DNA of 64,000 nucleotides, from assembly GCF_001194135.2 (NCBI RefSeq), contig NC_068985.1:106725102-106789101 (forward strand). The letters are read 5' to 3'. Below the pieces are notes generated by a model that was given only the letters and a program-made list of their open reading frames with translations, searched no databases and had not been told where the DNA came from. Below, piece after piece: positions 10,667 to 62,229 of this stretch; position 1 is the first letter of the stretch, and each line of letters starts with the position of its first letter. The position numbers were made by a program, and so were the translations under genes. Origin of the DNA: Octopus bimaculoides (lineage: Eukaryota).

Positions 10667-10777
<111 letters not shown>

Positions 10778-20486: not shown

Positions 20487-20559
20487 CTTCAGATCTCTGT
20501 GTACAATACCATGGTGATGGCAATAATTAACACTCTCTAATATTTGCTGCATGCAGTGA
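20487..20559 (-). CDS. CaMKII: CaMKII exon 6b (73 nt): (S)[24 protein letters not shown]
   Basis: Acceptor catatttcag|TCACTGCATG; donor CTGAAG|gtgagt; same length and phase as exon 6a; HRD motif intact. Confidence 0.94.
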
Positions 20560-21929
20560 CTGAAATATGAAAGAACAATGGATTTGCTGATCAAAAAGCA
20601 GCTCACATGTCACCATAGCAACAACTGTCTGACTGACTGACTACCCCATGCATTACTAGTGCAGTAACTCCGCTGCAGCTATGCTTTGGATGAAAAATGG
20701 AGGGGAGAGGGATTGGATTTTGCTTGCCCGACCACTATTCTGTACACTAGCTAGGCAGATTTTCAGCTTCAGAGGACATTGATGAGGCTATTCAAGTGTA
20801 TTGAGGAATAGACGATATACATGCATTTAGGTGTATCTGATTATGTGCTCTTACACATGCACACACACACACACACACATACATACACACTTTCTTCATT
20901 CCTTTGAGTTGTTGGCTTCTGATGGAGCCTTAGGAGCACTGTAAAGAAATACGGTATGTCTTGGGCTTTTTTTAAACCTACCAGAGTCCATTCCTCTCCC
21001 ATGTCTGATCATAGCCAATTTCTTTCAGATGGAAAAAAGAAAGATGAAAGAGAGAAAGAGAAGATTAATCAGCCCCACCACCACCACCTCCCCAGTGAAC
21101 TGGTATTTTATTTGCCTTTTATCCTTTCAGGATTTATAAAGTTGACCTGGAAGGGATCTGAACTTCAAACACAGGGAGTTGGAATGAATATCACAAGCTA
21201 TTTTACGCAACATTCTTACGATTGCCAATTCAGTCTACATACATATATACATACATGTATATGCACATACACGATATGCATGGGTACATATACATGTTTA
21301 TATACACCTTTATATACACATATGTGTGTGTGTCTGTGTGTGCGCATGCATGTGTAATGAACCTCCACCTCATTTACCCTCCTGAAATGCACACACCTTT
21401 GTCATTGCCCACCTCTCTTTCACGTCACACTTCCACTGACAGTCTTCACTAACTCTCTTTCCATGTCACCTCAATACCTGTACTCTTTTTGTTAGCTCAA
21501 ATTACCTTCCCCCTTCCATACTACTGACTAGTTAGTACTCCTTCACCATCAGGCTGCTTCTAAGAGATAAACATCAAACTCTCTTAATCATTGACCAGTC
21601 TACAGCAAAACCGTATTTTTCTAGGCTACTGCTGCTTATCTCTCCATGTATACATTCCTATTATCATTCATTACTCTTGTAGCACAATCTATCATGTTTT
21701 ACCAATTCACTTTTCCACCAACGTCAGCCCTCTTCTCCCCACTTCACACTAGTCCATTCTCTGCAACTGCGCTTTTCAACTCATTTTCCCTTGAATAAAT
21801 GGAGACCACACAGAGCTAAGAGGAACCAGACACAAGGCAACCCTCATTAATTATGGTGTAAGGATAAGTTGCATCCTTTTATGAAGTGGTGGGTGAACAA
21901 ATGGAAAAATAATAGGTTGGAAGGACGCT

Positions 21930-22285
21930 TAGTCTTGTCTTGGCCAGGACATGACAATCTCTCCAGTACTGATGCCACAATAAATACATCCTGTACACCA
22001 TAACAAGGTTGGTGAATGAAACATTGTAGGGTTCAGGAGAACATTTAATCTCAACGAGGGCATGACACCCTTGCTAGTACTAGTGACATGAAAAAAATGC
22101 ACCCAGTACACTGTGTAATGTGGCTGGTGTGAGGAATGGCATAAAGTTGTAGACAATGTGCCAATAATAATAGATGATAGAGGTGTGGTCTCCAGTCCAG
22201 CCATTTCTAAAAGAGCACAAACTGTAAAGAACTGTCCAACATATGTCAGCATGGAAAGTGGATGCAAACTGATGAGAATGATGTG
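21930..22285 (+). mobile_element. RTE LINE 3' end / tail repeat
   Basis: aaaatgcacccagtacactgtgtaatgtggctgg...cagcatggaaagtggatgcaaactgatgagaatgatg, the tail family that recurs through the window. Confidence 0.55.
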
Positions 22286-22303
22286 TGTGTATCTATCTAT
22301 CTA

Positions 22304-22397
22304 AGATAGATAGATAGGTAGATAGATAGATAGATAGGTAGATAGATAGATAGATAGGTAGATAGATAGATAGACAGATAGATAGGTAAGTAGATAG

Positions 22398-22460
<63 letters not shown>

Positions 22461-22478
22461 GATAGATAGATAGATAGA
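22304..22478. repeat. (GATA)n microsatellite
   Basis: Seen directly; it produces the YLSI-repeat ORFs in the track. Confidence 0.98.
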
Positions 22479-24136
22479 GGTACATGTATGCACATAAATA
22501 TGTGTGTGTATCAATATATACACATCTGATGAGGAAATTACTTATGTAATAAACGTTTCCATAGTTTTTCTATCTGTTGTCACTGACCTGTTTGGTCTGT
22601 TTCAAGTAACTAGGACAGTGCATGGTCTTTCATTGGTCATTGATATAGTATGAAACAGAAGTTAGTCAAGAGATTTTATTTTAGGGTGATACTGTCCTTC
22701 TTAATAGTTACAGTTTAACATGATTGCAGCATCATTAAATTACAGATCTGAAGCACCCAAACACATATACATGTCTACATGTGTTCATTTTTACATATTT
22801 TTACGATGTTTGCATGGGTCAGATGGAATTTGTTGAAGCAGTTTTTCTATGGCTGGATACCCTGTTCTATCACCAGCCTCCCACCTGTTTTCCTATGACC
22901 AAACATGATTTTCACTGAGGCCTAGAAACAATTACATTGCTTAGACGATAGTGATGCTCATTTGCAACCATCACATAATGTCAAGACAAGGGTACACACA
23001 CACATACATATAGACAGCAGACTTCATCTGCTTTCTGGTTACTGACTCCACTCACAAGGCTTTGATAAGCCCAGGGCTATAGAAGAAGGCACTTGCCCAA
23101 GGTGCTACGCAGTGAGACTCAACTTGAGACCATATGATTGGAGAGAAAGCTTCTCAACCACACAGCTATAATTGTGTCTATCATAGCCACTCCAGTGCCT
23201 AACGCACCCATACTCGCAGTTTATATATAGTACATACATTCATATATAAAACCTAATTGTAATCGTTTAAGTAAGAATGTTGATCATAAATACATCATCA
23301 CTACTCTTAGGACTACTAATCTTTATAGTCGGGATTATATCTTATTCGTTTACGTGACACTTTATTTATATATTGTTTATTTAGGGAACCTAATAGAAAA
23401 TTCTCCACTCCTTTTTTGATTTATATGTGAAAACTAAGGAAGATGTCATTCCTTTACATATTTAATTAAATTTAGCTAAACATGCTTCCTCTTATATGGA
23501 TGAGAGAAATGTTTAGTTACTGAAAGTGGGGAATGCATGGAAAAGAGAAATGGAGAGGGGGGAGGAGAGATGGAGAGAAAGAAGGGAGAGAGAGACAGAG
23601 ACAAACAAACAGAGGAAGGTCTATCCAATAATGGTGTGTGTATTTTTGCATGTGAGTTGGTTCACTAATGATACACTGACTAAAATTGATAATTTTATAT
23701 TTTGATTTGAAGAATTTTTTAACCATTTCTCTCACAATATTCGCATCTGATCTTTCTCAGTAATCTTTAAGCCTTTTATTTAATTCCTAACCATTAAATG
23801 GTAGAGATTTCTAATAACTTCTTTCATTGCTTTTCACTTTTTTGGCCCCTGTTCATTTATTCTTTTCTAATTAAGTATTTGTGGTAAATAACCTGTCTTT
23901 ATTTTACTACTTTACTATTTATTTATATTTCTATAAATTTGTATTGTGTGAAGATGGATATATGACTGAGAATGTGTGTTTTGTAGAGAATTGTCTGTAT
24001 ATATGTGTGTTCCTGTGTGTATGCATAGAATGATATAAGTGAAAGGCAGATGTTCACATGTGAGAGAGTGTGTGTGAGAGAAAAAGAGAGTATGTATGTG
24101 TAAGAATATATACAAATACACTAGTGCAAACACATG

Positions 24137-24184
<48 letters not shown>

Positions 24185-24454
24185 TGCTTTATTTTCAATA
24201 CTAGGTCAAAGTTCACAGATATATGTGTATGTGCACGCGCAAACATCATGTATACATAGCACAGAGTGAAACCAACGTTCTGTAATGAGAAAAACAGGTG
24301 TGAGGAGTTCTGGAGTACAAGGCAGAATATCATCACAGATTATGACAGCCTTGGGGAAAAGTGTATATGAAATAAATGCAGTACACATGCCATTATTGAT
24401 CCAAGGAAGAGACTGAATGTTAATGAGAGGTTATTGAATGTAGGGAATGCATGG

Positions 24455-24485
<31 letters not shown>

Positions 24486-24549
24486 TGAGTCCAGCCCATT
24501 TGGATCTGGTAAAGAGACCAGCTACCAAAGTTGACAGCACGGTTAAAGA

Positions 24550-26100
24550 TATGAGGGCAAGCAATGTAGATGAACTATTGACAATACCCAGTAAAATAGG
24601 ATACATGCTATTCACACACACAGCCAATTAGTCAATCAAAGAGTAAAAGATGTCATTCCTAATGGCTATCACACAGAGTGCTATCATCAACTACAAAGGA
24701 TATGCTCTAGAAAGAAGTGAATACAGAGGTATTAAATTGATCGACTAGGATACAAATCACAGCCACAGTCCAATGACTAAAACAAGTAAAAGATAGATGA
24801 GATGCAGTTTGTTCTGGAGCCATGATGAGATATAACTCATACTTTCTTCTTAGTGAGACAACCACAGAAGAATTTTTAAGTACAAGCCATTATAACTTGC
24901 ATTTGCTGATGTGGAGAAGACCTCCGACAGGGTACCATGAACTGTAGTCTAGTGGTCACTAAGTAAACTAGATATAAATGAATGGTTTTAAGAATCCATG
25001 CAAGCTATCTATGAAGACACTGTCAGCAAAGTGAAGGTTAGCAATGAGTTCAGTGAGGAATTTAACATGCAGATAGATGTCCATTAGGGCTCAGTTCTTG
25101 TAGCCGAATCTGTTGAAGAATTAGAGAAGAAATTCTAGAAAGCAAAACCTAGTGCCAAGAAGTCTTAATATAAACTTAGCAAAGATTAAGTATCTTGTCA
25201 GCAAGAAAGAAGACAACCCACCAATGGCATCAGGGAAGTTATAGAGAAAAAATGCAGGTAGGAATTTGATATAGTCTAGCCAATGTAAATTATGGCTATG
25301 CAAGAATTAGAGTTAGGTTGACAGTGAACAATGACTCCGTAGGTAACAAATGTACAGAAGTAGTCAAGAGTTGGAAGACCTATGGGATACATTCTTTCAA
25401 ATGCTTGGAAAATTCCATAAAAGTAGAATACTTCTCTTAAAAATGTGACTAAATTAGAAGTGGAAAAGGGTATTTTACAAGCATACTAAACAGGAAAAAC
25501 AAATGGTGTGGAAAATATTTCATGAGCTGTTACCCCTATGAATTAAGCTTAATTGTATAAAGTGGGATATTTTCATGGTAGCAGTTCATGTGCACTGAAT
25601 GAAGAAAGCATATAAAGGCTAGAAAGAATGAGAAGAATATGGGAACATGACATAAAATGAATGTATAAGGAGAGAGGCAGTCAAGCATATTTGGATCCAA
25701 AGAAGTTAAAAGAATGGACCTATAGAGTTAAAAAATATGAAGGCAATTAAGACTAGTCTCTGAGATGCTGAAAATATCTGGTGAAATAGGACAATGCTAG
25801 TCACATGCATAGTCAATCAGAGTAAAAAGAAGTGTCTAGCATCAGTGTACTTGAACAGAGCATGAATAAATTCAGAGAAAGACTGAGTATAAAAAGAAAC
25901 AGATGCAATGTGCAAGAGAGAAGGTTGCCCTGGTACAGACTTCTCATTGTGAAGGATGACAACTGTGTAAAAAAAAAGTGTCAAGCACTCAAATGGAAAG
26001 AATCTTTAGAAAAAGGGAGACATGAGAAGTAGTAAAAGTTAGTCTCTGGACGCTGAACATCATGAAGGAGATGAAGAAAAGGAACACAAGTGGAAAGATG
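24550..26100 (+). mobile_element. Decayed RTE-clade LINE (RT domain to C-terminus) with a short SINE-tail insertion at ~24759-24795
   Basis: YRGIKLID, DEMQF, FADVEKTSDRVP, SKVKVSNEFSEEFNMQIDVH*GSVL, AESVEELER and RCNVQERRLPWY...DDNCVKK occur in the expected order. Confidence 0.8.
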
Positions 26101-28056
26101 TTGCACTGGAGTAGACATGAACACCCCACATGAACAAAAAAAAAAGATTTTAAAAATTATCAAGTTTGTACACACACACATATGTATATATTCACACATT
26201 GTCCTAAACCAGGACTGCTATGTTATGTTGGTAAATAATCTTTACTCAACAATGTCACCATTTACGAAAGATTCTTTAAGAAACTTTGGATGGTGCACCA
26301 GTTGCAAGCCAAAGTAATACATGAGCAAATTAAAAATCTAAGCCATTATCTCACTTGGGTGGGGGAAAAAGAAGTGTTAGAAAAGTAATGCAAAAAGGCT
26401 GAATGTTGAAATGGAAGTAGTTTGGGAAAGAAAGATGGACAGTTGAATAGGATGAATAATTAGAACCACAATAACATCCCAAAGTATGCTGTTCAACTTA
26501 TAACATTAAACTAATTTTCTCATTCAGTTTCTTTTTAATTCTTTTCACTCTTTCCTTCTCTTCCCTCTTTCACAGACAATTTTTCTCTCAGATGATAATG
26601 TGTGTATGTGCATATGTATGCATACCTAATGTTTACATATAAGTATATATGTATGTGTGTCTCCTATATCTACAGATGTATATTTATGCATAAACACTCA
26701 ACATGCATCATCATCATAATTATCAACGTAGTTTTATGTCTACTTTCCATTCTGGCAGGAGATGTACAGGTCACCAAGGACAAAGTCAGTATATAAGGTG
26801 CTGCTCACCTAGATGGGTTAGTGAACTGCACCTCACTCATGCCTTTCACTTTTGGCTTGGTTGCTACAGCAGGCTGCCCTTCCTAATACTAACCATTTTA
26901 CCAAGTGCACAAGGTACTCTTTTTGTTTTGTGACACCATCACTTGAAAGAAGTCATGTTGTCAACAAGAGTCCACTTTAGAAAGTGTAATGGACACTATT
27001 CTGTGGCACCAGTGCTAGAGAGGTAACTATATCAATGATAAGACTAAAGGGGCTTTTGAACCTATGTCTCTATGTCTCTACTTGCTCACTGACCTCTTTA
27101 CAGATTAAGAGGCAAGGTGTGAGTGATTCAGTGATAGAGGCATCAATGCCAATGGTATGTCATGACAGATGCATGATAGGGCCACTGCATTTCCTAGACA
27201 TATGTACAATCAAAGTAATGTGATCAGGGGGATAAAGTAATGGCAGAAGGCAATATGATCAAGGAATTAAAATGATGTCAAGGGAAGAGTAAGAAACAAG
27301 AGTATAATGGCAAGCACTGATGTCACTAGTGCAGGAGTGGATGACAAGGATGAATATATATATATAGGGAGAATTCACAAAAAAGAACAAAAGATGAAGA
27401 CAGATGTATTAGTATAACGGTCGGGAAGTGAAAAAGTCTTTAAGCCTACACTCTTCCACAGAAAGAAACAAGGAGAGAAAAAAAGAATGTGTAGTGGCTA
27501 GCGATCTATCATGGTGAATATATATATAATTAAAGAGAGAGAGAGAAAGAGAGAGTGAGAGAGAGAGTGTGCAAGCATATATATGTGTTGATTTAAATTA
27601 ATATCTACTATAATAAATTTTGGAGTGAATTTATATATTTCATTTCCGTTTCACTAAAGTGTAGTAGGAAAAGGAGGGAAAGAGAAGAAAGTGGGGGTAG
27701 TGTTCAAGAGAATGGAAGAGTGAAAGGTAGAGTTGTGAAAGAATGAGTATGAGAGAGACAGGAATAGGAGATAAATGAGAGGAAACAATAAAGGGACAAT
27801 AGAGAAATGGAGAGACAAATGACGGGAATGAAAAAGATAGTAAAATATAAACATGGCTGATGGTGAAAAGAGAGAAATTTATGGGATGCATCTGTGCAGC
27901 AATAACAACAGAGGTATTTACACAAAGACACACATACATAAAAATATTCAGAAGTCACTTTAAAATGAACACTCATATCTCATAGTGATTAAGTCCACAG
28001 ACAAATGAACACAGAGAAATACAAATACAGCACAAGAGCTAAAAACACATACATAC

Positions 28057-28090
<34 letters not shown>

Positions 28091-29388
28091 GAATGAAAAT
28101 TTGGATTAATAAGTTTAGCAATCGTGAACAGATGATCAGAAATGCATTATTTGTGGTATTGAATACTATATTTTAAATATTTGTACTGTGTTATGCATTC
28201 ATTTTTTTCCTAAGTATAGATATTTAGCAAATTTTATACATTTGGTTTTCTTTTTGTAGGTTGCTTTCCTTTTCTCTGAAATTTCATTTAGTTTCTGAAA
28301 TAATATAACAATCAGCAATCTGATTTATTAAACAAAATCCGGTTTCACTGATATATATTTCTAAAGTCTCAGATGAATAATTCAGGTTGAATTACGTAAC
28401 AAATAATCCAAACAATGTGTCTGAAATAATAAATATAAGACAGAATTAACATGACTGTCATTCATATATCTTCTAAAAGAAGTTTTGATGCATGTATATA
28501 TGAATAGATATCTTTTCTGTCCAGTTGAATTATTCATTATATATTAAATTTTATGTAACGTTTTACTCATCATATAGCTTAGTGATAAAACTAACACAGA
28601 GGTCCAAGAGTTCAACTCCTTTTAGAGACAAATATACACGCTGATCTATATTCTCTATAATATACTGCGTTGTTTGTTTGTGTATGTGTGTGTGTTTATG
28701 CGTGTGTATTTTGTTTTTGCATTTGATTTGCAAGATTCTTTATGCGAATTCGTGTGACTCTTCCTAGACACAATAATATACACACACACTCTTCCTAGAC
28801 ACAATAATACACACACACACATGTTTACATAACTTGTTATTATGTATTTCAGTAATAGGACTAATGAAATAAGCCATAAGTTCAACTCTTTTTAGGGATG
28901 AAAATATACGTCTATATCATCATTTTAACATTTACATTTACATGTTTGTATGGGACAGATGAGACTTCATTTAGGTAGAAATTTTAAACTCTGGATGCTC
29001 TTCCTGCCCCTACCCCTCACTTTTTTCCCAAGCAGGTTAATGTTTCCCACTGTCATTCAAATAATGGACACAAACAACACTGTTTGCAAGAATAGTGACA
29101 TATTGCTCTGAGTGTGCCCACATCAAAAACAAGACAAATCTACAGTCAGTATCCACATACACATCCAACAGGGTTCTTCTAATTTTCATCTACCAAACTT
29201 CGTTCACAATGTATTGGTTAACATATGGTTGTAGTATAGGACACCAGCCAATTGTGTCCAACAATAGGAGCTAAACTTAAAACATGCCTCATCTGAAGCA
29301 AACTTAAGAGATAGATACAGCTTGTACACTTTTCTTCTTTCTTTCTCTCTTTCCCCCTCCCTCTCTCTTTCTCTCTCTCTCTATATAT

Positions 29389-29790
29389 ATAATTAATTAA
29401 AAAATAAGGAGAAAACAAGACAACAAGGAAAAAACAACGTGATGATGTAGGATGTAGTACATGCAAAGTATTAATGAGACACTCAGAGAAGGAAAGAAAG
29501 AGTGGTTGTTTTACATTTCAAGCAAAGCTCTTCTTCAGAAACAGGAGACATAAGAAAGTCCAAAAGAAAAGGAAAATGGAGAAAAAAAATTGCCAACAGT
29601 CCACATTCTTCTTTCTTTTCTTTTGGACTTTCTTATGTCTCCTGTTTCCGAAGAAGAGTTATGCTAGAAATGTAAAACAACAATTTTTCTTTCCTTCTCT
29701 GAATGTCTCATTAATACTTTGCATGCACTACGTCCTTGTGTTGTTGTTTTTTCTTGTTGTCTTTTTTCCTCCGCTTTTTTAATTGATTAT
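29389..29790. repeat. Long inverted repeat (two ~185-nt arms, ~40-nt loop) built from a Penelope-terminal-like repeat
   Basis: gtagtacatgcaaagtattaatgagacactcagagaagg...gtccaaaagaaaag (to 29571) is matched by the reverse complement of 29615-29790; about 90% identity in the core by eye. Confidence 0.95.
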
Positions 29791-31369
29791 TTACCACATG
29801 TTTACATGGAAACCCATCCTTCCGACTGGCTTTGGAGTACCTAATTTGTGGATTTCTTTCTACCATCGAATTATATCACCTTATTCATTCAGAGTACGCC
29901 ATTTCTGCACCTTGATTATATGATCCTTTACCCATCTTTTTCTCTGCCATGACACGTGATGGTTATTTCCTTTTTCTTAAACATTTTCCCACACTCTTGT
30001 AATAAAGACATTGTACATAAAAAAATTTTAAAACTTAACCGAAACTCATTTATTCTATAATAATTCTTCTCTTACAATTTCATGACATAATCTGGCCGTG
30101 TAATGTATTTTCAAATTTAATAATACAGACTCAAATATAAACATAGAAACTGATGAAAATAGCCTAAAGTTTCTATCTTTACTTTTTAGCATTATTTATG
30201 CTAGACTAGCAGTTCAGACAGATAAAACAACATACGGACAATAACCACTATAACTTGTGTTATTCTACAATTTTTGTTGATAATTTCAGTAAGCAGTCTA
30301 GTATTTTGAAGCATGGTGTGATTAACAATAATAATCCAAAGCCATGTAACGCTACATGTAAACCAGAAACTGGAATTTACAAGAAAGTTCTTCAGGAGTG
30401 AGAGTTTGTAGAGATATGATGTTAAGAAGCAAACAGTTTTTGGAATCTGCAATGTTAATTACAAACTCACTAAATTTTATTTGAAATAATATATATGTCA
30501 ATTCTAAATCATCATCTATTGGAGATAAAAAAATTGTCTAAGTGATGTAAAAGATACACATCTTGCAAAAGTCACAAAGTGGTCTACCATCAATAATATT
30601 GTAGTAATAATGTCACTGGTACAGAAATTCTAAGTGTTGCAATCAAAGCAGCCAGGAATGTGAGCATCAAAAATTTCACAGCTACTGATAGGTAGTTAAG
30701 GACAATGACAGTCATGGATGAACAAGTAGATCTGAGGAAATTCAAACATTAAATAAAAAAGGTTAAATGACTTAAATATGAAAGGCTCAAAATTTCCAGA
30801 GAATATAATGGGGACGAAACTTGCTATATTAATAGTATCCTGTGATAATCAAGCCTTAAGGATTGGAGTTTCCACAACTAATCATAAATAAATAATGTTT
30901 TTCAGTGTTGTGTGACATGAATACACATTTAAAAATAGCTGTGGTGGGTACATCAACAAGTTTTTGAAAGGAAAAGTGCATCAGCTATTGGCACCTTTTT
31001 ACATTATAACAATCTGTAGAAATAGTAGTCTAATATGCATAACTCTAATGTGTGGTTTTTCTCTATAGTTATGCATAAATACATTTTACACACACACACG
31101 CACACACATCACCATCATCATTTAAAATCCACCTTTCCACGCTTGCATGGACTGAATGTAGTTTGTTACAACAGATTGTCTATGCCCAAATGCCCTTCCT
31201 ACTGCCAATTCTTATCTGTTTCCAGATAGGCATTGGCAGTGGGAAGGGTTGGTGCTGTTATCAACTGTCATGAAATGACATTTCTGTTCTGAATTAGTCA
31301 TGCATGAAATTCCAAGAGTTTAGGTTGCTTTGCTATGCACATAACTACAACTACTGAAAACATATACCT

Positions 31370-31804
31370 CAGGGATGGGCAACTTTTCGTCAACTGAGGG
31401 CTACATTGTACCATTTTCAAGTGGGAGAGGGCCACATGATAAAACACATATGCATGAAATATTACTTGCCCACTTTACACTGAATTTTTTGCAGTTCTTC
31501 TTAATTTTATTTGTCTTAGCATGAAAATTTACATTAAGTTGGTATCTCTTTCATTATTTCCTAATGGTAATAATGATGATTATTAGTGTAAATAAATTAT
31601 AGTTTAAAATACTGAGGTCAAAAAAAAAAAAAAAAAAAAAAAAAAGAAAAAGAAAATTCATTGATATTTTATTAAAGAACAAATTCCGTTATCTGTATCA
31701 ATGAGATTTTTGCACATTCACATTCTTTACCATATTTTGCGCTTGTAAAAATTCGTAACCAAGAAACTCATCGAGGGCCGTGGGCCACAGGTTGCCCATG
31801 CGTG
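31370..31804. mobile_element. Non-autonomous hAT (Charlie-like) MITE
   Basis: TIRs cagggatgggcaac (31370-31383) and gttgcccatgcgtg (31791-31804) match 12/14. The 8-bp flanks atatacct / atatacat match 7/8, consistent with a hAT TSD. Confidence 0.8.
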
Positions 31805-33079
31805 ATATACATTGTCTTTAACAAACCAGGCCTCCTAAAGCACTATATATTTTTCTTTATTTTTCTTCATCTCCATACATTTCATTCTACTGATATATTT
31901 GTTTGTTTATTCATTTTTTTATCTTGTTCTTTATATTTTCATTGCATAGTTTATTTATTTAAATATTATGAGACAGTCAGCTAAATCTTTGGAAAGCAAA
32001 TCGTTATGATAAACATATTCTTTCTTATTCTATCTTTATTTTAAAAAATTCTATGGTTTTTACTTTATTTTATTGCATTCTTTTTCTGAATTTGTATCTA
32101 CTGTTATCATTTCACTAATGCACTCCATATATGGTAATTCTGTCAAATAGATTTATTGTCTGTGACTATATAATTCTTTCTACTATAGGCAAAATGCCTG
32201 AAATTTTGAAGAAAGGGTTAGTCAATTACATCGACCCCAATACTCAGCTGAAATGTTCTGAAGCATAGTTCATTATTTATACCACATTTATATTTATGGG
32301 TGCAAATATATATATTCATTTATATACTTGTGACAGATGATGTAGCATTGTTTATGTAGCTAAAACAAATTATGAAACAGCTGTCAACTAATGGAATAAA
32401 CATCAGTTGTCTCACTCAACTTCTCTTATCTATTCATTATATATATNNNNNNNNNNNNNNNNNNNNNNNNNNNNNNNNNNNNNNNNNNNNNNNNNNNNNN
32501 NNNNNNNNNNNNNNNNNNNNNNNNNNNNNNNNNNNNNNNNNNNNNNNNNNNNNNNNNNNNNNNNNNNNNATATATATATATATATATACATGCACATACA
32601 TATCTTTCCACACACACACACACATATATATATTGCCATCTGTGTATATGCAAAAATACAATTAGAAGGTGATGCAGTGGATTTAACTGAGATAAAATTT
32701 CTACAAAACGATGTTGTGTTTAAATCACTATATTGGAGTGAAATGAGCATCATTGCAGCAGTGACTCACAAGAATGTGAAATGCATTTCACCTTCAATGG
32801 GGTTTGTCAGTAACATGCTCTTGATAGTCACCGGATTAAGTCAGCATTGATCAACTTAAACAAGGAGACCATCCAGAAGAGTTGCAAGAGATTCTGAAGT
32901 TGTCTGGAAGTCGTAATTGAAGCTAATGGTGATTTTATAGAATAAATTTACTCTTTAGTATATCAAGATATTTTTGTGTAATTTTGGTAAATATATCTGT
33001 TAAAATGAGATGTCAGCGTTATTTTCATTTTTGAGTAATTTAGACGAGAGTTTATTCACCGCACCATGTATATGTATAT

Positions 33080-35600
33080 AAATAAACACACAAAAAAGAA
33101 CAGCTCCCAGAAAGAATAACCAAGGAAAGAAACAACTTAAGTGGGATGGTGGAGACAGGCTACCACTTCACACATCCGAAGCTCAGGTCACAATGCACAT
33201 TGTCTCAACCTTCGAAATATGTGAATATTGCACATACTGCTTTGAAGACAAAGAAGTACCTAATTGCAGAGTAGACAGCTGCAGCTAAACAGAAGTGTTT
33301 TTTTGGATATGGTGCAAAGGACTGTAAAGCAGCTGACCTGGCTGCAACAAATACTGAATCAAAGTAATGTATATAAGCAAGCAAGACCACTGCAACTAGC
33401 AAATGATGCAGAGTGGCCACCCCTGATGCTACCACAAATGTCAAACCAGTGGCCACTTCAGACACCCCATACACCACACCAGTGTTATTATTGAATATGA
33501 GAGGCCTTGTAACACTCCACCAGCACAAAGTGCCATTCTTGAGAGGCTTAGTTACATGTAATCAAGCAATATGCATTTCACTAACAGATATACATCTAAC
33601 CACTGACATAGTAGACACTGAAAGACATATGGTGTATTTCAAAGTGATAAGAAGGAAAGAACTCATGGTGGAGTTGAGATGTACATCCAGGAAGATGTCA
33701 TGTCTGTAGTCTTATTGTCACTCAAACTCAGTTTGTGACACACATTAAGCAAATCAAAATGGTAGTATGTACAACATATTGTTCCCAGATGCCCTGAATC
33801 ATGAGGACTCATTCAAAATGATGGAAGAGAGAGTAACCAACAAAGATGATAACCTTCACATACTTCTTCTAGGAGACTTTGATTTCCCTAATATTGAATA
33901 ATCTGAGGGCCATCCCCTCTCAAGAATGTTACTGCATGAACAGAAGCAGGCAGAGTCTCTACTTGACCTTACAAATATGCAATTCATGAAGCAAATAATG
34001 CTCTACCCAACAAGGGGTAAAAATGTCATGGACCTCTTCTTTACAAATAAGGTGGTGCTCATCCATAATCTAAATGTGACACCAAAGATTGGAACTAACA
34101 AAGTATGGTCCAAGAAGAACTACAGACAAATACCTGATTCCTTTCCAGTAGGAACTTTCATAAAGCTAACTAAAAAGGTATTCTGAAAGAGGTGCTGGTC
34201 CGCCAGTCTCTCTATGCAAGATACTGACATAAAGCTACAACATTTTATGACAACCATATAAAACATAAGGTAAGTTTACTCCAGAGAGAAAGTCAAACTG
34301 ACAGAAAAACACAATTCTCAGATACAGGAAAATTCTAATGAGACAATGGACAACAATCTCATATCATCTAAACAGACCACTAAATGATAGTGTGGAACTC
34401 TATCTCAAACAAGAACTGCTTGAGATTGAAAGTGAACTCAAACACTCCTATGTAAAGGAGAGAGCAGAAAAAAAGAAGCCTGGACTGTAAAAGATGTAAA
34501 GGCAAACCCCAAAGCCTACCATAAATTTGCAAAACAGTCTGCTTCAGTACAGTACATGATAGTGCAACTGTTCAAAGAAAATGGCTCACTGACTACAGAC
34601 ACCTGAAGGATAAATGAAATGCTAAATATGCAATACAAAATTGCTTTCACACATCTGTTGGGACACTTGCAAATAAATATGCCAAACATGTTCTTTGACA
34701 CTATAGCTCTACATGAATGATGGCAATTATTGATTACATCGAAATAGAGGAAACTGATGCAATATCAGCTATTGATATTAGCAAGTGGAGTACTTCAGAG
34801 AACTGTCTTGGGACCACTACTGGTTATTTTGGCCCTCTCAGACATACCATCAGTAATACAGGCAGCCACTCCCACTATCTAAGCGAATGATGAAAACGAA
34901 GTACAAACAGTCATGAGTCCTCATAATGCTAATTCTCTACACAACGACCTACATACAAGTAGGCTGAAGAAAACAACATGCAATTTAATGCAGAAAATTT
35001 CAAGCTCTCTGCTATCAGCCATCTTGTGCTAACAATCGCAACAAAACTACTTTGGACCAAAAGGAGCAGCAACTCTAGAGTCAAATACAGTGTGTGTGAC
35101 CTGGGGATTGATATGAGCAATGATGTGTCATTTCATGTACATATCAAATGATGTTGGCAATGTGCAGGTGAATGGCTAGGTGAATTCTGAGAACTTTCAG
35201 GACATAGGACCAGGAAACTATGCTGTCTTATGGAGGACATTTGTCCTTAGCCATCTGGACTACTACTCTCAACTATGGTCAATTCACAGTGTCAATTTAA
35301 TAGAAAAATTCAAGGCAGTTCAGCGATGCTACACCAAAAAGAGATCTGCATCAATGAAACACTTGATCTGAAAGAGACTGAAGTTGAAGTGAAGGTAGGA
35401 GAGGTATGCAGTGATATACATAGAGAAAGACAGGCACCAAGCCCTGAACAGGACACCACTGCACTGCTCCAAAGGTCCCACTCATTCCATGTAGAGTGGG
35501 AACCAGGTATTGCAATGACTTAGGATTCAAAGGTTCACAACTATTTAATACTTTGTCAAAAAACTTGACATATTTATATGGAGTGGAGTAGACCTTCTGC
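33080..35600 (+). mobile_element. Decayed CR1-group LINE (ORF1 remnant, APE endonuclease, RT with internal deletion, C-terminal region)
   Basis: LLNMRGLV..ISLTDIHL, HGGVEMYIQED, LLLGDFDFPNIE, YPTRGKNVMDLFFTN, NPKAYHKFAK, GVLQRTVLGPLL, NNMQFNAE and TFVLSHLDYYSQLWS occur in order; the first half of the RT is missing near 34780. Confidence 0.8.
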
Positions 35601-36429
35601 TGTCCAAGACCCCAAATGAACCTACATCAAGGCAACAAACTCAAACAAGGGCAATAATATCAAATTCCTTCTCTCACCAAAAACCAACCTGATAGGAATG
35701 GCCACTAAAAAAAGCGATGATGCTAGCAGTGCTTCAGCATGGCCACAGCCTTTAGGCTGAAACATATAAAAGAATAGAAGAGGACATAAACACAGACACA
35801 CACATACATATGCATGCACATACACACACACATGTATAAATACATATACACATATATGCATATAGAAATATAAAAATATACACTCACATACCTTCATTTT
35901 AATACATACATACATACATACATACATACGTACGTACATACATATATACAGACAAATATATGCACAGATGTATATGCATACATATATTCACATCATCATC
36001 ATTTAATGTCCATTTTCTATGCCGGCATGGGTTGGATGCACACATACATATATGTATACATATATATATTCATACATATATAAACACACATACACACAAA
36101 CTATATATATATATTTATACAGTCATTGGCTGATTTTTGAATAGCTCCTTTGACCATCTAACCAGGTGATGACCATCATGTAATTACATAGCTGCAGATA
36201 ATCCTATGAGGAAGAGTGAATCAGCATGAGCTATTTCAGTTGATGCCTGTATAGCATACATTCAATGATGCCAGTGTTGATTCAACAAACAATTTGTGTG
36301 AGTATTATCCTATCTTTCCAGGGAACTGTCCATAGAACGTTCAGGCTCTAAATGCTTTGTGAGTATGAAATCGGACATTAGAAAGACATTATTGCATGCA
36401 TGTGCACACACTTTCTCTACCTACATACA

Positions 36430-36475
<46 letters not shown>

Positions 36476-37108
36476 AACACATACATCTGTAATGAACAGA
36501 ATGGTTATTAAAGAATATAAAGTATTAATTCATTCTATCATGCCACAGATACACATACATGCACACACACACACACATTATGGCTTGAACGGAGGGAAAG
36601 GAAACTACGTATAACACTTTCACATCCACTGAGATAAGTGAGGTTGATATGGTTGGTGTTCAGCTTGAACATTTATCTGTAATATGCCTGTAATGAACAC
36701 ACAATAGTAACTGAGGTGTAGAGAGTTTAAACTTGATTCATTACGTACTCACACACAGAAATAACAGTTCATTTACACATTGGGTAAAGAATATTCCAGG
36801 AAAAGGAAGAAACAAAATAGTAAAATAAAATAAATAAAAATAAGAAGTGAATAATTGAAAAGAAACCAATCCCCACCCTGCTGCCAGAACTGCGAGTAAA
36901 ATATGACCTTCTGGTAAAGGAAAGAAATCTATGTCAGCTGATATAACTTAGTGTCATTTGAACCATGGCTGAGAATCTTGCCAAGCTGGTGACCAGCAGG
37001 TGGAGAGCAAGCAAGCTGGCAGACAGTCAAGATGGTGGGTGGGAGATACATGAACATATCTGCTGCGGAACAGAACATAATTTCACTATTTTTGCGTCCT
37101 GCACCCAC

Positions 37109-37181
37109 CTTCAAGTCTCTGTGTATTATACTATTTTGGTGGCAGTGGTTAACTCCTTCTAAGATTTGTTGAATGCAGTGA
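37109..37181 (-). CDS. CaMKII: CaMKII exon 6a (73 nt): (S)[24 protein letters not shown]
   Basis: Acceptor tcttttcag|TCACTGCATT; donor TTGAAG|gtgggt; 1 nt + 24 codons, in frame with exons 5 and 7; contains the HRD catalytic motif. Confidence 0.93.
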
Positions 37182-37223: not shown

Positions 37224-37226
<3 letters not shown>

Positions 37227-37278
<52 letters not shown>

Positions 37279-37397
37279 ACGAGAGAGGAGGAGAGAGAGA
37301 GAAAAAGAGAGAAACGAGAGGAGAGAGAGAAAGAGAGAGTAAGAGAGAGAGAGAGAGAAACGAGAGAAAGAGAAAGAGAGAGAGAGAGAGAGAGAGG
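37227..37397. repeat. (GA)n-rich tract; (UC)n on the CaMKII sense strand, directly upstream of exon 6a
   Basis: Seen directly in the sequence. Confidence 0.97.
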
Positions 37398-40300: not shown

Positions 40301-41935
40301 AAAAAAACTGTTTCGCAAGAAGATTGTAATGTTTATTTAAAACACTAATCTATTAAGTTGTAAACAGTTAATGATTCACATATTTCTTAAATTGTTTCTT
40401 ACTAAGCATGCATGCCTAAATGCTCTTAATCCTAAATGATATTAACTCATTTAGGGTGGGGGAGAAATGACCCTTCAAAACTTCTTTAAGGACTAAATTT
40501 AGGGGGGGGGGGGGAAACCCCTTGAAAACTTCTTGAAAGACTAAAATTTCTGAATTACTAAAGTAGAATGTGTAGATACTACTCTGGATCTCTTTAATTG
40601 CCTTTATTGCCTATGCCGTAAACCCAATGAAACAATTAACCCATAGATATTCCAACCAGTTCTGACAATATTAACCACCACATCCTAAACAATTTATGTA
40701 GGCTTCCCAACTATCAACTAACAAACGAATTTTTAACAATGTATCTCAGTTAAGATTTGACCACCAGTAGTAGCTTTAAGGATAAAATGTATTACACAGC
40801 AACACCTATACCTTGCCCCCAGTAAAAACTACATAGGAAATGAAACATAACCTGGTACTACTTAAATTTAATATTACAATCAATACAGCAGTTGTTTAGA
40901 TATTGTTTAAGCTCCTTGAAAAACATTTCCCTCAAACTACAAGACACCAGGTACAAAGCAAAAATATTATCATACTTTTGTACCCTATTACCCGAAATTT
41001 TAACTACTATTAGCATATCATACATAATTCTAAACTTATTGAACACAGAATCATGAACCAATAAAGCATCAATCTGTGCAACTGTCCTGTAGCTTCTAAC
41101 TACACAATTAGGGTTAATGTGTACAAATGACTGGTTACTACTTAAGACAACACAAAAGCTTGCATTGGAAGGGCCCCAAACCCATTTAAATCACAATTTT
41201 CTTTGCATATGCATTCCTTTAAAAACCATGACAAGCAAACTTCTTTGGTTTCATACATTTGGCCATTAAGGATAATTCAATACCAGATCAACGTAAATAG
41301 AACATTTTATCTACAGCTAAAGCATATGAGGAGAATAATAACCTGTAATCTTTGTACAATGAAGGGCTTGCATATTTTTGGCAAAGGCGCCTTTATTCAA
41401 CAGCCATTCAGAAAAGATTCCAAACAGCATACGCAGAAATTTTAAGTTGTATAGATTTTACATGCTGATACTCTTCCACATCACTATCAACGGCCTACAT
41501 ATTCATATGCATGCATGTTTCAACTATCATTCTTTCCATGATTGATTCTATTCCTAAAAGACATCATGTTTTTAATTCTTATCACTAATAGTTTTCACCT
41601 TCACCAATATTAACAATTGTAAATCCATCAATATTAACTCTAAATCGATGTGCATGACCATTAGTATTGCTTTGTTTTGTTCTGACTTTGTTTAGCTTAC
41701 CATGTTAACAGATTTCATTCACTTTTCAATTTTGTTTCATTCTTACTAGACATTCTGAAGAGTATTTATGAAATAGTTTTATCATCTTCTACATGTCATT
41801 CTCAACAAATAAAAGAAAAAAGTAAAAACCTCCTTTCAGTCTATATTAGTAGTGTATTCAATACTTTCTATTCAACAGTGGCTATTTCTATTACTACCAA
41901 TAAATTTTATTGCTTTTATATGTGTGGGTGTATGC

Positions 41936-41984
<49 letters not shown>

Positions 41985-42149
41985 NNNNNNNNNNATCATC
42001 TTCTACATGTCATTCTCAACAAATAAAAGAAAAAAGTAAAAACCTCCTTTCAGTCTATATTAGTAGTGTATTCAATACTTTCTATTCAACAGTGGCTATT
42101 TCTATTACTACCAATAAATTTTATTGCTTTTATATGTGTGGGTGTATGC

Positions 42150-42192
<43 letters not shown>

Positions 42193-60055: not shown

Positions 60056-60121
60056 CTGGCATCTGCTTCACTGTAAAACTCTCTAGCAACTATATCTTCA
60101 AATAATTCACCACCTGTTACT
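60056..60121 (-). CDS. CaMKII: CaMKII exon 5 (66 nt): (x)VTGGELFEDIVAREFYSEADA(S)
   Basis: Acceptor ttttcag|AGTAACAGGT; donor GATGCCAG|gtatta; 1 nt + 21 codons + 2 nt. Lies inside ORF-track entry 59905..60141. Confidence 0.96.
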
Positions 60122-61443: not shown

Positions 61444-62229
61444 ATGCAATTAGAAAAAAATTATATGCAATTAGGAAAGGTCAGTATAGATATGCATGTC
61501 CGGATGATACCGCAGAAGTACAGGGTCATTCCAGAGCTGTATCCTATTGTGTTGGTTGATTTTAAGGCAATAGAACTAGTTAGTGGTGCTGGGAAGAAAG
61601 CCCAGCTGTTATATTTGTGGCAGCAAAAGCCACTTGAGGGTTTTCTATTATGCAGAGCTAGCAAAATGCTAAAGGTTGATCAGGGTTTGGGAGCTGTTGT
61701 TCCAATAGCAACACCACCTGCATCACTGGTTGTAGATATGAGGATGGTTGAAAAATCATCCTCAATCTTAGTCTTAGATGTAAACCATTCTAAGGTACTC
61801 TCTCCTACCCTGAATCTAGTAGAGAAAGTCATTTCAAGAAACCAAACAGGTAGGAACCTTGTTTCCCTTTCCTAGCTAGGAAACATAGTACGACTCCATC
61901 ATTTTGTGAGGAGATCTATGGAAGGAAGTAAATTTCCAAATAGTTGCAGAAAACACAAAGAGGTAAAAGAGAAAAAAAGCAGCTCAAAAGGAAACCCAAC
62001 CACAGAAGAAAATAACAATAAAATATAAGATCCCATTCTCTTCAGAACAACAATTAATGATGATAAGGAAGATGATGATAGCCCCCTCTGGATGTTAAAC
62101 CAGTGCTTCATAGATAACAGAGTGGTACAGCAGGCATTGCCTGGATTCAAAGAACAAATAGATTCAGAATATGACGGATGTTCTGAAGACAGACACCTAG
62201 TGAAAAACAATAGTAATTTATTACAATGA
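61444..62229 (+). mobile_element. Decayed ORF1 of a non-LTR retrotransposon with a gag-type zinc knuckle
   Basis: One frame runs 61444-62229 with two internal stops. A shifted frame gives GRKPS-CYICGSKSHLRVFY (61607-61648), i.e. CX2CX4HX4C with the last Cys changed to Tyr. Confidence 0.6.

What the first reader, a model, noticed from the sequence alone, without database searches (positions are those of the whole stretch)
20487..37181. Duplicated catalytic-loop exon in CaMKII: two mutually exclusive 73-nt exons 16.5 kb apart
Seen in sequence: two exons of identical length and phase with intact AG/GT ends and open frames lie between single copies of exons 5 and 7. They encode [24 protein letters not shown] and [24 protein letters not shown] (7 of 24 residues differ). 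Synonymous positions have diverged while HRDLK and QQILE are kept, and the flanking introns show no extended similarity, which argues for an old duplication with both copies under selection. Established: this segment is helix alphaE plus the HRD catalytic loop. As I recall, vertebrate CAMK2D also has two alternative versions of exon 6. Inference: this animal makes two kinase-core variants from one CaMKII gene, either convergently with vertebrates or by retaining an ancient arrangement. I do not know whether this has been described in cephalopods.
Basis: partly seen in the sequence, partly recalled or inferred. Interest (0 to 1): 0.88.

Follow-up and report, generated by a model that had tools for sequence, protein, structure and literature searches.

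The report
Alternative catalytic-core exon pair in CaMKII
This cephalopod CaMKII gene really does carry two interchangeable 73-base exons for the helix just before the catalytic loop; octopus gene models already use both, and the same pair is found in other molluscs and in annelids, so it is an old and ordinary-looking but little-described isoform switch.

Summary
On the minus strand lie CaMKII exon 5 (60121-60056), exon 6a (37181-37109), exon 6b (20559-20487) and exon 7 (10777-10675). All four have AG/GT ends. 6a and 6b are both 73 nt and in the same phase. They differ at 7 of 24 residues, their synonymous sites are saturated, and their flanking introns share no similarity.

Using one copy keeps the frame. 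Using both or neither gives early stop codons.

The N gap lies inside the intron between the copies and touches no coding sequence.

Octopus bimaculoides RefSeq models come in pairs that differ only by this swap. 6b is the commoner form in models and transcripts.

The same 5-6a-6b-7 layout, always 73 nt with AG/GT, occurs in a bivalve and two annelids, with class-specific residues kept. The pair therefore predates the mollusc-annelid split. Nematodes and vertebrate CAMK2D and CAMK2B-like genes also have two copies. An insect and a spider have one.

The vertebrate CAMK2D 6A/6B pair is published and dated to Chordata. I found no paper on the invertebrate pair. With 24 residues I cannot tell whether all pairs share one bilaterian origin.

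Verdict: real, a new member of a known kind, of moderate interest.

The parts
60056..60121 (-). CaMKII exon 5 (66 nt; ...[21 protein letters not shown] + first two bases AG of a Ser codon), single copy
   Evidence: AG acceptor and GT donor read directly
37109..37181 (-). Exon 6a, upstream copy (73 nt, phase 2-in/0-out; [24 protein letters not shown]); donor GTGGGT
   Evidence: identical peptide in O. bimaculoides XP_052823878.1 and two other isoforms
37226..37396 (-). (CU)n-rich tract on the sense strand just upstream of exon 6a (92% pyrimidine in the 200 nt before the acceptor); possible splicing-regulator platform (inference only)
32447..32569 (.). Assembly gap (N run) inside the 6a-6b intron, flanked by (AT)n; no coding sequence crosses it
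20487..20559 (-). Exon 6b, downstream copy (73 nt, same phase; [24 protein letters not shown]); donor GTGAGT
   Evidence: identical peptide in 36 Octopus/Acanthosepion proteins, an O. vulgaris GenBank protein record, and JGI/Logan transcript contigs
10675..10777 (-). CaMKII exon 7 (103 nt; [34 protein letters not shown] + G), single copy

Best explanation
This is a pair of tandemly duplicated, mutually exclusive exons in the single CaMKII gene of a coleoid cephalopod (the peptides are identical to Octopus proteins). The pre-mRNA, read from the minus strand, joins exon 5 to either 6a or 6b and then to exon 7. Each copy is 73 nt (3n+1). Including both puts a stop nine codons into 6b. Skipping both puts a stop in exon 7. 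Only single-inclusion mRNAs therefore encode a kinase; the others would be truncated before the catalytic loop and are expected to be removed by nonsense-mediated decay (inferred). The two products differ at seven positions of helix alphaE, the alphaE-beta6 loop and strand beta6, directly before an unchanged HRDLK. These are positions 3, 9, 12, 15-17 and 19 of the exon, or residues 117-133 of the octopus protein. The catalytic residues are the same. The likely effect is a tuning of the kinase core (activity, stability or docking of the regulatory segment) in particular cells or stages; this step is inferred and untested. 6b is probably the default form and 6a the regulated minor form. The pair is inherited from at least the common ancestor of molluscs and annelids, and both copies have been kept by selection.
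For: Anatomy and frames. Old duplication with purifying selection: dS saturated, dN 0.136; no intron similarity. Use of both exons: O. bimaculoides isoforms X18 and X19, and X2 and X1, differ only at the seven exon-6 residues. 6b is found in an O. vulgaris GenBank protein record (QHX41518.1) and in JGI/Logan transcript contigs. A metatranscriptome mRNA of a mollusc-like animal carries a 6a-type exon spliced between exons 5 and 7 (L036). Conservation: Pinctada, Owenia and the compact-genome annelid Dimorphilus all have 5-6a-6b-7, with both copies exactly 73 nt and AG/GT. Haliotis, Solemya and Nucella proteins show 6a-type exons. Every lophotrochozoan upstream copy is closer to the window's 6a (1-5 differences) than to its 6b (7-8). 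Every downstream copy is closer to 6b (1-5) than to 6a (6-9). Orthologous copies differ mostly by synonymous changes, for example 9 synonymous against 2 non-synonymous codons for 6a versus Pinctada. CaMKII identity: E = 1.9e-46 to the solved Drosophila CaMKII chain 5fg8, which is identical at 76 of the 81 aligned residues. Default status of 6b: 36 of 39 cephalopod proteins found carry it. Its donor is nearer the consensus (GTGAGT against GTGGGT), as in Pinctada, Owenia and Dimorphilus.
Against: No junction reads or long reads were examined. Use of 6a in cephalopods rests on three RefSeq model proteins of one species, and I did not check what evidence supports those models. No O. sinensis or O. 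vulgaris protein with 6a was found. NMD of the double-inclusion and double-skip forms is inferred from frames alone. No functional difference between the two cores has been measured in any species. Donor strength does not predict usage in mouse Camk2d, where the upstream 6A dominates. The species of the window was not identified.
Confidence: 0.85

Rival explanations
1. Origin question, reading A: the spiralian, nematode and vertebrate pairs arose by independent duplications of the same 73-nt exon, that is, recurrent convergent evolution.
For: Vertebrate 6A (ESVNHCH...) and 6B (EAVLHCHQMGVV) carry none of the class-defining residues of spiralian 6a (I3, G9, I19) or 6b (M3, Y12). Distances are uninformative, at 4 against 4 and 6 against 7 differences. 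An insect and a spider have a single copy. The published dating of the human CAMK2D event is Chordata, and the same authors report frequent convergent tandem exon duplications between vertebrates and invertebrates (PMC9741552).
Against: The same exon, length, phase and tandem position recur in all seven loci. The Steinernema upstream copy shares EGV and a non-Val residue before HRD with spiralian 6a, and its downstream copy shares S9 and Y12 with 6b. Both the spiralian and the vertebrate pairs are each old enough to approach the bilaterian ancestor.
Confidence: 0.5
2. Exon 6a is an unused relic copy (a pseudo-exon) and only 6b is ever made into protein.
For: All transcript-derived cephalopod sequences found carry 6b. 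6a has the weaker donor.
Against: The reading frame, the exact 73-nt length and AG/GT ends are kept in a cephalopod, a bivalve and two annelids, while the surrounding introns share nothing. Changes between orthologous 6a copies are mostly synonymous. RefSeq and GenBank models of Octopus, Haliotis, Solemya and Pinctada use 6a. An assembled mRNA carries a 6a-type exon.
Confidence: 0.04
3. The two copies belong to two different genes or haplotypes that were joined wrongly at the assembly gap.
For: An N run of estimated length lies between them, flanked by (AT)n.
Against: The divergence (17 of 73 nt, synonymous sites saturated) is far beyond allelic. O. bimaculoides models from a chromosome-scale record place both exons in one gene. 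The same order is present without gaps in Pinctada, Owenia, Dimorphilus and Steinernema. Exons 5 and 7 are single.
Confidence: 0.02

Closest known systems
Vertebrate CAMK2D mutually exclusive exons 6A/6B (mouse Camk2d, Genes Cells 2025, PMC12060085; human event catalogued by Martinez-Gomez et al. 2022, PMC9741552)
   Same: Same gene family, same exon (alphaE to HRDLK), same 73-nt length and phase, two tandem copies between single exons 5 and 7, and mutually exclusive use.
   Different: The residues that distinguish the copies are different: vertebrate ESVNHCHLNGIV against EAVLHCHQMGVV, cephalopod [12 protein letters not shown] against [12 protein letters not shown]. In mouse the upstream copy dominates, and 6B is about 10% and seen only in olfactory bulb. 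In cephalopods the downstream copy appears dominant. Orthology of the copies is unresolved.
RefSeq Octopus bimaculoides CaMKII isoforms (e.g. XP_052823878.1 with 6a; isoform X19 with 6b)
   Same: The exon 5-7 peptides are identical to the window, and the isoform pairs differ only by the exon-6 swap.
   Different: These are database models only. I found no publication describing the pair in cephalopods or any invertebrate.
Other deeply conserved tandem-duplicated exon substitutions (e.g. Ca-alpha1T/cca-1, conserved across protostomes; tropomyosin N-terminal pair), as reviewed in PMC9741552
   Same: Homologous exons of equal length used alternatively, conserved for more than 500 million years, with conservative substitutions that leave catalytic or binding residues intact.
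   Different: Those cases concern channels and structural proteins. Here the swapped piece is the core helix and strand leading into the catalytic loop of a kinase.

Membership tests
CaMKII (CAMK2) gene | Kinase-domain sequence specific to CaMKII across exons 5-7 | tested here: met
   E = 1.9e-46 to the solved Drosophila CaMKII chain 5fg8, identical at 76 of the 81 aligned residues; all 22 best PDB hits are CaMKII. 100% identical to Octopus CaMKII proteins over exons 5-7.
CaMKII (CAMK2) gene | Conserved exon sizes and phases 66 / 73 / 103 nt for exons 5, 6, 7 | tested here: met
   The 73-nt exon 6 recurs in seven loci from four phyla. That 66/73/103 are the vertebrate sizes is from my own recollection.
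CaMKII (CAMK2) gene | C-terminal association (hub) domain PF08332 | not testable with these tools
   It lies outside the 64-kb window. The Octopus proteins that match exons 5-7 exactly do carry PF08332.
Mutually exclusive tandem-duplicated exon pair | Two adjacent homologous exons of the same length and phase with intact splice sites | tested here: met
Mutually exclusive tandem-duplicated exon pair | Double inclusion or double skipping is non-productive | tested here: met
   Both give frameshifts with early stops. Removal by NMD is inferred, not tested.
Mutually exclusive tandem-duplicated exon pair | Mature mRNAs carry exactly one of the two | tested here: inconclusive
   RefSeq isoform pairs differ only by the swap and transcript contigs carry 6b. 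No junction reads or long reads for 6a in a cephalopod were available.
Orthologue of the vertebrate CAMK2D 6A/6B event | Same exon, length, phase and tandem position | tested here: met
Orthologue of the vertebrate CAMK2D 6A/6B event | Copy-by-copy orthology (6a with 6A, 6b with 6B) shown by shared derived residues or a supported tree | tested here: inconclusive
   No shared class-specific residues. The NJ tree on 24 positions gives bootstrap values of 4-34% for the relevant groups.
Lophotrochozoan CaMKII 6a/6b pair (defined here) | Upstream copy with I3, G9 and I/V-I before HRD; downstream copy with M3, S9, Y12 and G17; order 6a then 6b | tested here: met
   Window, Pinctada, Owenia and Dimorphilus loci; Haliotis, Solemya and Nucella proteins; distances.

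The most novel reading that the evidence does not exclude
The CaMKII exon-6 pair is one bilaterian-ancestral mutually exclusive exon switch. On this reading it is retained in spiralians, in nematodes and, through the vertebrate genome duplications, in CAMK2D and CAMK2B, and it was lost in arthropods. That would move its published origin from Chordata to Bilateria. It would be one of the oldest regulated isoform switches inside a protein-kinase catalytic core.
Probability: 0.35. Interest if true: 0.65.

Novelty: new member of a known kind. Interest (0 to 1): 0.45.

Why it matters
CaMKII is a central decoder of calcium signals in neurons and muscle. Almost all work on its isoforms concerns the variable linker. 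A second, conserved switch inside the catalytic core has been kept for over half a billion years in molluscs and annelids, and it is paralleled in nematodes and vertebrates. This implies that two versions of the kinase core do different jobs. The function of mouse and human exon 6B is still unknown, so invertebrates with a single CaMKII gene would be simpler systems in which to find out what the swap changes. For genome annotation the finding also explains several faulty gene models that string both copies together (Owenia, Nucella, Steinernema, Dictyocaulus, Metynnis, Lerista, Anabarilius).

Tried and rejected
1. A protein search with the bare 81-aa exon 5-6b-7 peptide returned only short fragments (<=142 aa) and no cephalopod sequence.

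2. A profile of composite full-length sequences was swamped by vertebrate CAMK2D and Drosophila. It was useful only for revealing the vertebrate 6B peptide.

3. A query made of six tandem copies of the two 81-aa units finally ranked full-length proteins by their exon 5-7 match and brought in cephalopods, molluscs and annelids.

4. The look-up of encoding contigs holds only the longest isoform of a gene. The Octopus X18, Haliotis and Nucella loci therefore could not be fetched, and no second cephalopod genome sequence could be compared across the gap.

5. The exon tree on 24 residues has too little signal to link the nematode or vertebrate copies to 6a or 6b.

6. A scan for GCAUG (Rbfox-type) motifs near the exons showed no pattern shared among the protostome loci. 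Only the vertebrate loci share one.

7. I looked for a C. elegans unc-43 exon-6 pair in the published survey of mutually exclusive exons; it is not listed.

8. Rfam, long-ORF and Pfam passes over the window found nothing in the introns.

9. The metagenome scan gave no cephalopod 6a transcript, but it did give one 6a-type mRNA from an unidentified mollusc-like animal.

10. I did not search for docking/selector RNA pairing. With 16-23 kb introns and no second cephalopod sequence, it would not be interpretable.
Full report
**1. The observation**

The CaMKII gene lies on the minus strand. There is no third exon-6-like or second exon-7-like match, even at E<=10.

Reading the DNA gives these exons:

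| Exon | Coordinates | Length | Peptide |
|---|---|---|---|
| 5 | 60121-60056 | 66 nt | ...[21 protein letters not shown] |
| 6a | 37181-37109 | 73 nt | [24 protein letters not shown] |
| 6b | 20559-20487 | 73 nt | [24 protein letters not shown] |
| 7 | 10777-10675 | 103 nt | [34 protein letters not shown] |

All four exons have AG acceptors and GT donors. The finding's coordinates are exact.

- The two copies share 56 of 73 nt. Seven of 24 residues differ, eight more codons differ synonymously, dN is 0.136 and dS is saturated.
- Colinear similarity ends 6 nt outside the exons. Everything else shared by the flanks is simple repeat.
- The joins 5-6a-7 and 5-6b-7 are open. The join 5-6a-6b-7 stops nine codons into 6b, and 5-7 stops inside exon 7.

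**2. The assembly gap**

The N run (32447-32569) lies inside the 16,548-nt intron between the copies. It is 4.5 kb past 6a and 11.9 kb before 6b, and has (AT)n on both sides. No coding sequence crosses it, so the frame question does not arise.

What could matter is whether the two sides belong to one locus. I could not fetch a second cephalopod genome sequence to test this, because the look-up tool holds only the longest isoform of each gene. The indirect evidence is strong:

- O. bimaculoides RefSeq proteins, from a 127-Mb record, use both exons within one isoform series.
- The same exon order occurs without gaps in four other invertebrate loci.
- The divergence between the copies is far beyond allelic.

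The 16.5-kb distance is approximate.

**3. Are both exons used?**

A search with a query made of tandem copies of the two 81-aa units reached full-length proteins.

- Thirty-six Octopus bimaculoides, O. sinensis, O. vulgaris and Acanthosepion pharaonis proteins carry the exact 6b peptide.
- Three O. bimaculoides isoforms (X18 = XP_052823878.1, X6, X2) carry the exact 6a peptide.
- X18 against X19, and X2 against X1, have equal length and differ only at the seven exon-6 residues, positions 117, 123, 126, 129, 130, 131 and 133.
- 6b also occurs in an O. vulgaris GenBank protein record (QHX41518.1) and in JGI and Logan transcript contigs.

I found no transcript contig from a cephalopod with 6a. 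Its use there rests on gene models whose supporting evidence I did not check. One marine metatranscriptome contig (L036) is relevant. It is a full-length CaMKII mRNA, 78-80% identical to mollusc proteins. It has a 6a-type exon ([24 protein letters not shown]) spliced between exons 5 and 7.

**4. Distribution in other animals**

Genomic loci fetched through the look-up of encoding contigs were scanned with the window's exon peptides. The exact exons were then extracted.

| Locus | Animal | Exon 6 copies | Upstream copy | Downstream copy | Spacing |
|---|---|---|---|---|---|
| L004 | Pinctada imbricata (bivalve) | 2 | 6a type | 6b type | about 0.8-1.1 kb |
| L001 | Owenia fusiformis (annelid) | 2 | 6a type | 6b type | about 0.8-1.1 kb |
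| L005 | Dimorphilus gyrociliatus (annelid, very compact genome) | 2 | 6a type | 6b type | about 0.8-1.1 kb |
| L002 | Steinernema carpocapsae (nematode) | 2 | NCIQQVLEGVHFCHRSNVLHRDLK | [24 protein letters not shown] | 302 nt |
| L003 | Metynnis (teleost), CAMK2D | 2 | 6A | 6B | 1,662 nt |
| L007 | Lerista (skink), CAMK2B-like | 2 | gamma-like copy | canonical EAVLHCHQMGVV exon | 8,274 nt |
| L006 | Parthenolecanium (scale insect) | 1 | single copy, fused to exon 5 | - | - |
| L008 | Caerostris (spider) | 1 | single copy, both flanking introns present | - | - |

In every two-copy locus both copies are exactly 73 nt with AG/GT ends. L007 is best matched by CaMKII beta structures.

Protein records extend the picture:

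- Haliotis, Solemya and Nucella proteins add 6a-type exons.
- The nematode Dictyocaulus also has two copies.
- The fish Anabarilius has a CAMK2B-like gene with the same two copies as Lerista.
- Several published gene models wrongly include both copies: Owenia, Nucella, Steinernema, Dictyocaulus, Metynnis, Lerista and Anabarilius.

**5. Orthology**

Within Lophotrochozoa the two classes are clear. Upstream copies keep I3, G9 and an I or V followed by I before HRD. Downstream copies keep M3, S9, Y12 and G17.

- All six other upstream copies are 1-5 differences from the window's 6a and 7-8 from its 6b.
- All six other downstream copies are 1-5 differences from 6b and 6-9 from 6a.
- Orthologous copies differ mostly synonymously. 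Against Pinctada, 6a has 9 synonymous and 2 non-synonymous codon changes, and 6b has 7 and 1.

The duplication therefore predates the mollusc-annelid split, and both copies have been under purifying selection since. Retention in Dimorphilus, whose genome is very compact, points the same way.

Beyond that the signal runs out. The Steinernema upstream copy shares EGV with 6a, and its downstream copy shares S9 and Y12 with 6b. However, the distances are ambiguous and NJ bootstrap values are 4-34%. The vertebrate copies share no class-specific residue with either spiralian class.

The vertebrate pair is itself old. It is present in both delta and beta paralogues. The roughly 24 nt before exon 6B, including a GCAUG at -8, are nearly identical between teleost CAMK2D and skink CAMK2B.

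**6. Mechanism**

Shown by the sequence: there are two interchangeable exons, and only single inclusion keeps the frame.

Inferred: transcripts with both or neither exon are removed by NMD. This was shown experimentally for 3n+1 and 3n+2 exon pairs in C. elegans (PMC4165533).

The swapped segment is the C-terminal part of helix alphaE, the loop after it and strand beta6, ending in HRDLK. The catalytic loop continues as PEN in exon 7. This assignment rests on general kinase knowledge and on the match to solved CaMKII structures. The catalytic His-Arg-Asp-Leu-Lys is identical in both forms.

The differences are conservative and clustered at positions 12-19. The likeliest effect is a tuning of core packing next to the catalytic loop, and hence of activity, stability or regulatory-segment docking. 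This is inference. No functional difference has been measured, even for the mouse pair (PMC12060085).

6b looks like the default form. It accounts for 36 of 39 cephalopod proteins, for all transcript-derived sequences, and for most mollusc models. Its donor is closer to the consensus than that of 6a in the window, Pinctada, Owenia and Dimorphilus. The 200 nt before 6a are 92% pyrimidine because of a (CU)n microsatellite. That could bind PTB-type repressors, but this is a guess.

**7. What is known**

- Mouse Camk2d exons 6A and 6B were shown to be mutually exclusive by long-read sequencing. 6B makes up about 10% of transcripts, in olfactory bulb only, and the authors state that its significance is unknown (PMC12060085).
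- The human event is in the catalogue of tandem duplicated exon substitutions. It is illustrated on structure 6ayw and dated to Chordata (PMC9741552).
- That paper does not mention CaMKII in invertebrates, unc-43, octopus or cephalopods.
- The C. elegans survey does not list an unc-43 exon-6 pair.
- Eight full-text searches found no description of the invertebrate pair.
- The octopus isoforms are already in RefSeq.

**8. Verdict**

It is a new, database-annotated but apparently unpublished member of a known kind. What this work adds is that the pair is ancient and conserved across molluscs and annelids, and that the same exon is duplicated in nematodes and in two vertebrate paralogues while being single in arthropods. 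Whether this reflects one bilaterian origin or repeated duplication is open. I put the single origin at about 0.35.

Noticed in passing
window 37226-37396: A (GA)n microsatellite on the + strand, which is (CU)n on the sense strand, lies directly upstream of exon 6a. It makes the 200 nt before the acceptor 92% pyrimidine. The region upstream of 6b is ordinary (54%).
   Followed up: partly
window 41781-42190: A 214-bp unit is present as 2.0 tandem copies at 100% identity inside intron 5. It is either a very recent duplication or an assembly artefact.
   Followed up: no
L003 about 61650-61676 and L007 about 21880-21906: The roughly 24 nt before vertebrate exon 6B (CAC[A/G]CCCCCTGGTGTTTGCATGCAG, with GCAUG at -8) are nearly identical between teleost CAMK2D and skink CAMK2B-like genes. 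Exon 6B itself is about 63/73 nt identical. This is an intronic element conserved across paralogues and could be an Rbfox-type site.
   Followed up: partly
L007 13557-13631 and 21905-21979; protein P0246: CAMK2B-like genes of a skink and a cyprinid carry an extra upstream, gamma-like exon-6 copy with intact AG/GT ends. The vertebrate pair is therefore not confined to CAMK2D and predates the delta/beta split.
   Followed up: partly
L002 2563-2637 and 2939-3013; protein P0288: The nematodes Steinernema and Dictyocaulus have two tandem 73-nt exon-6 copies. The published C. elegans survey of mutually exclusive exons does not list such a pair for unc-43.
   Followed up: partly
L006 19548-19685; L008 12783-13680: A scale insect has exons 5 and 6 fused. 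A spider has both introns but only one exon 6. Arthropods sampled here therefore lack the pair.
   Followed up: yes
L036 (metatranscriptome contig Ga0314671_10019975): This is a full-length CaMKII mRNA from an unidentified mollusc-like animal, with a 6a-type exon ([24 protein letters not shown]) spliced between exons 5 and 7.
   Followed up: partly
proteins P0243 (Gigantopelta), P0242 (Macrostomum); loci L040, L047-L049: Some gene models contain a second, divergent exon-7-like segment. Some arthropod-like transcripts have an 11-residue insert PENLILSEKPK right after HRDLK. These may be further alternative exons at the next position. No second exon 7 exists in the window.
   Followed up: no
proteins P0245, P0247, P0250, P0288, P0241, P0244, P0246: Deposited gene models of Owenia, Nucella, Steinernema, Dictyocaulus, Metynnis, Lerista and Anabarilius string both exon-6 copies into one protein. 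These are annotation errors caused by this exon pair.
   Followed up: yes
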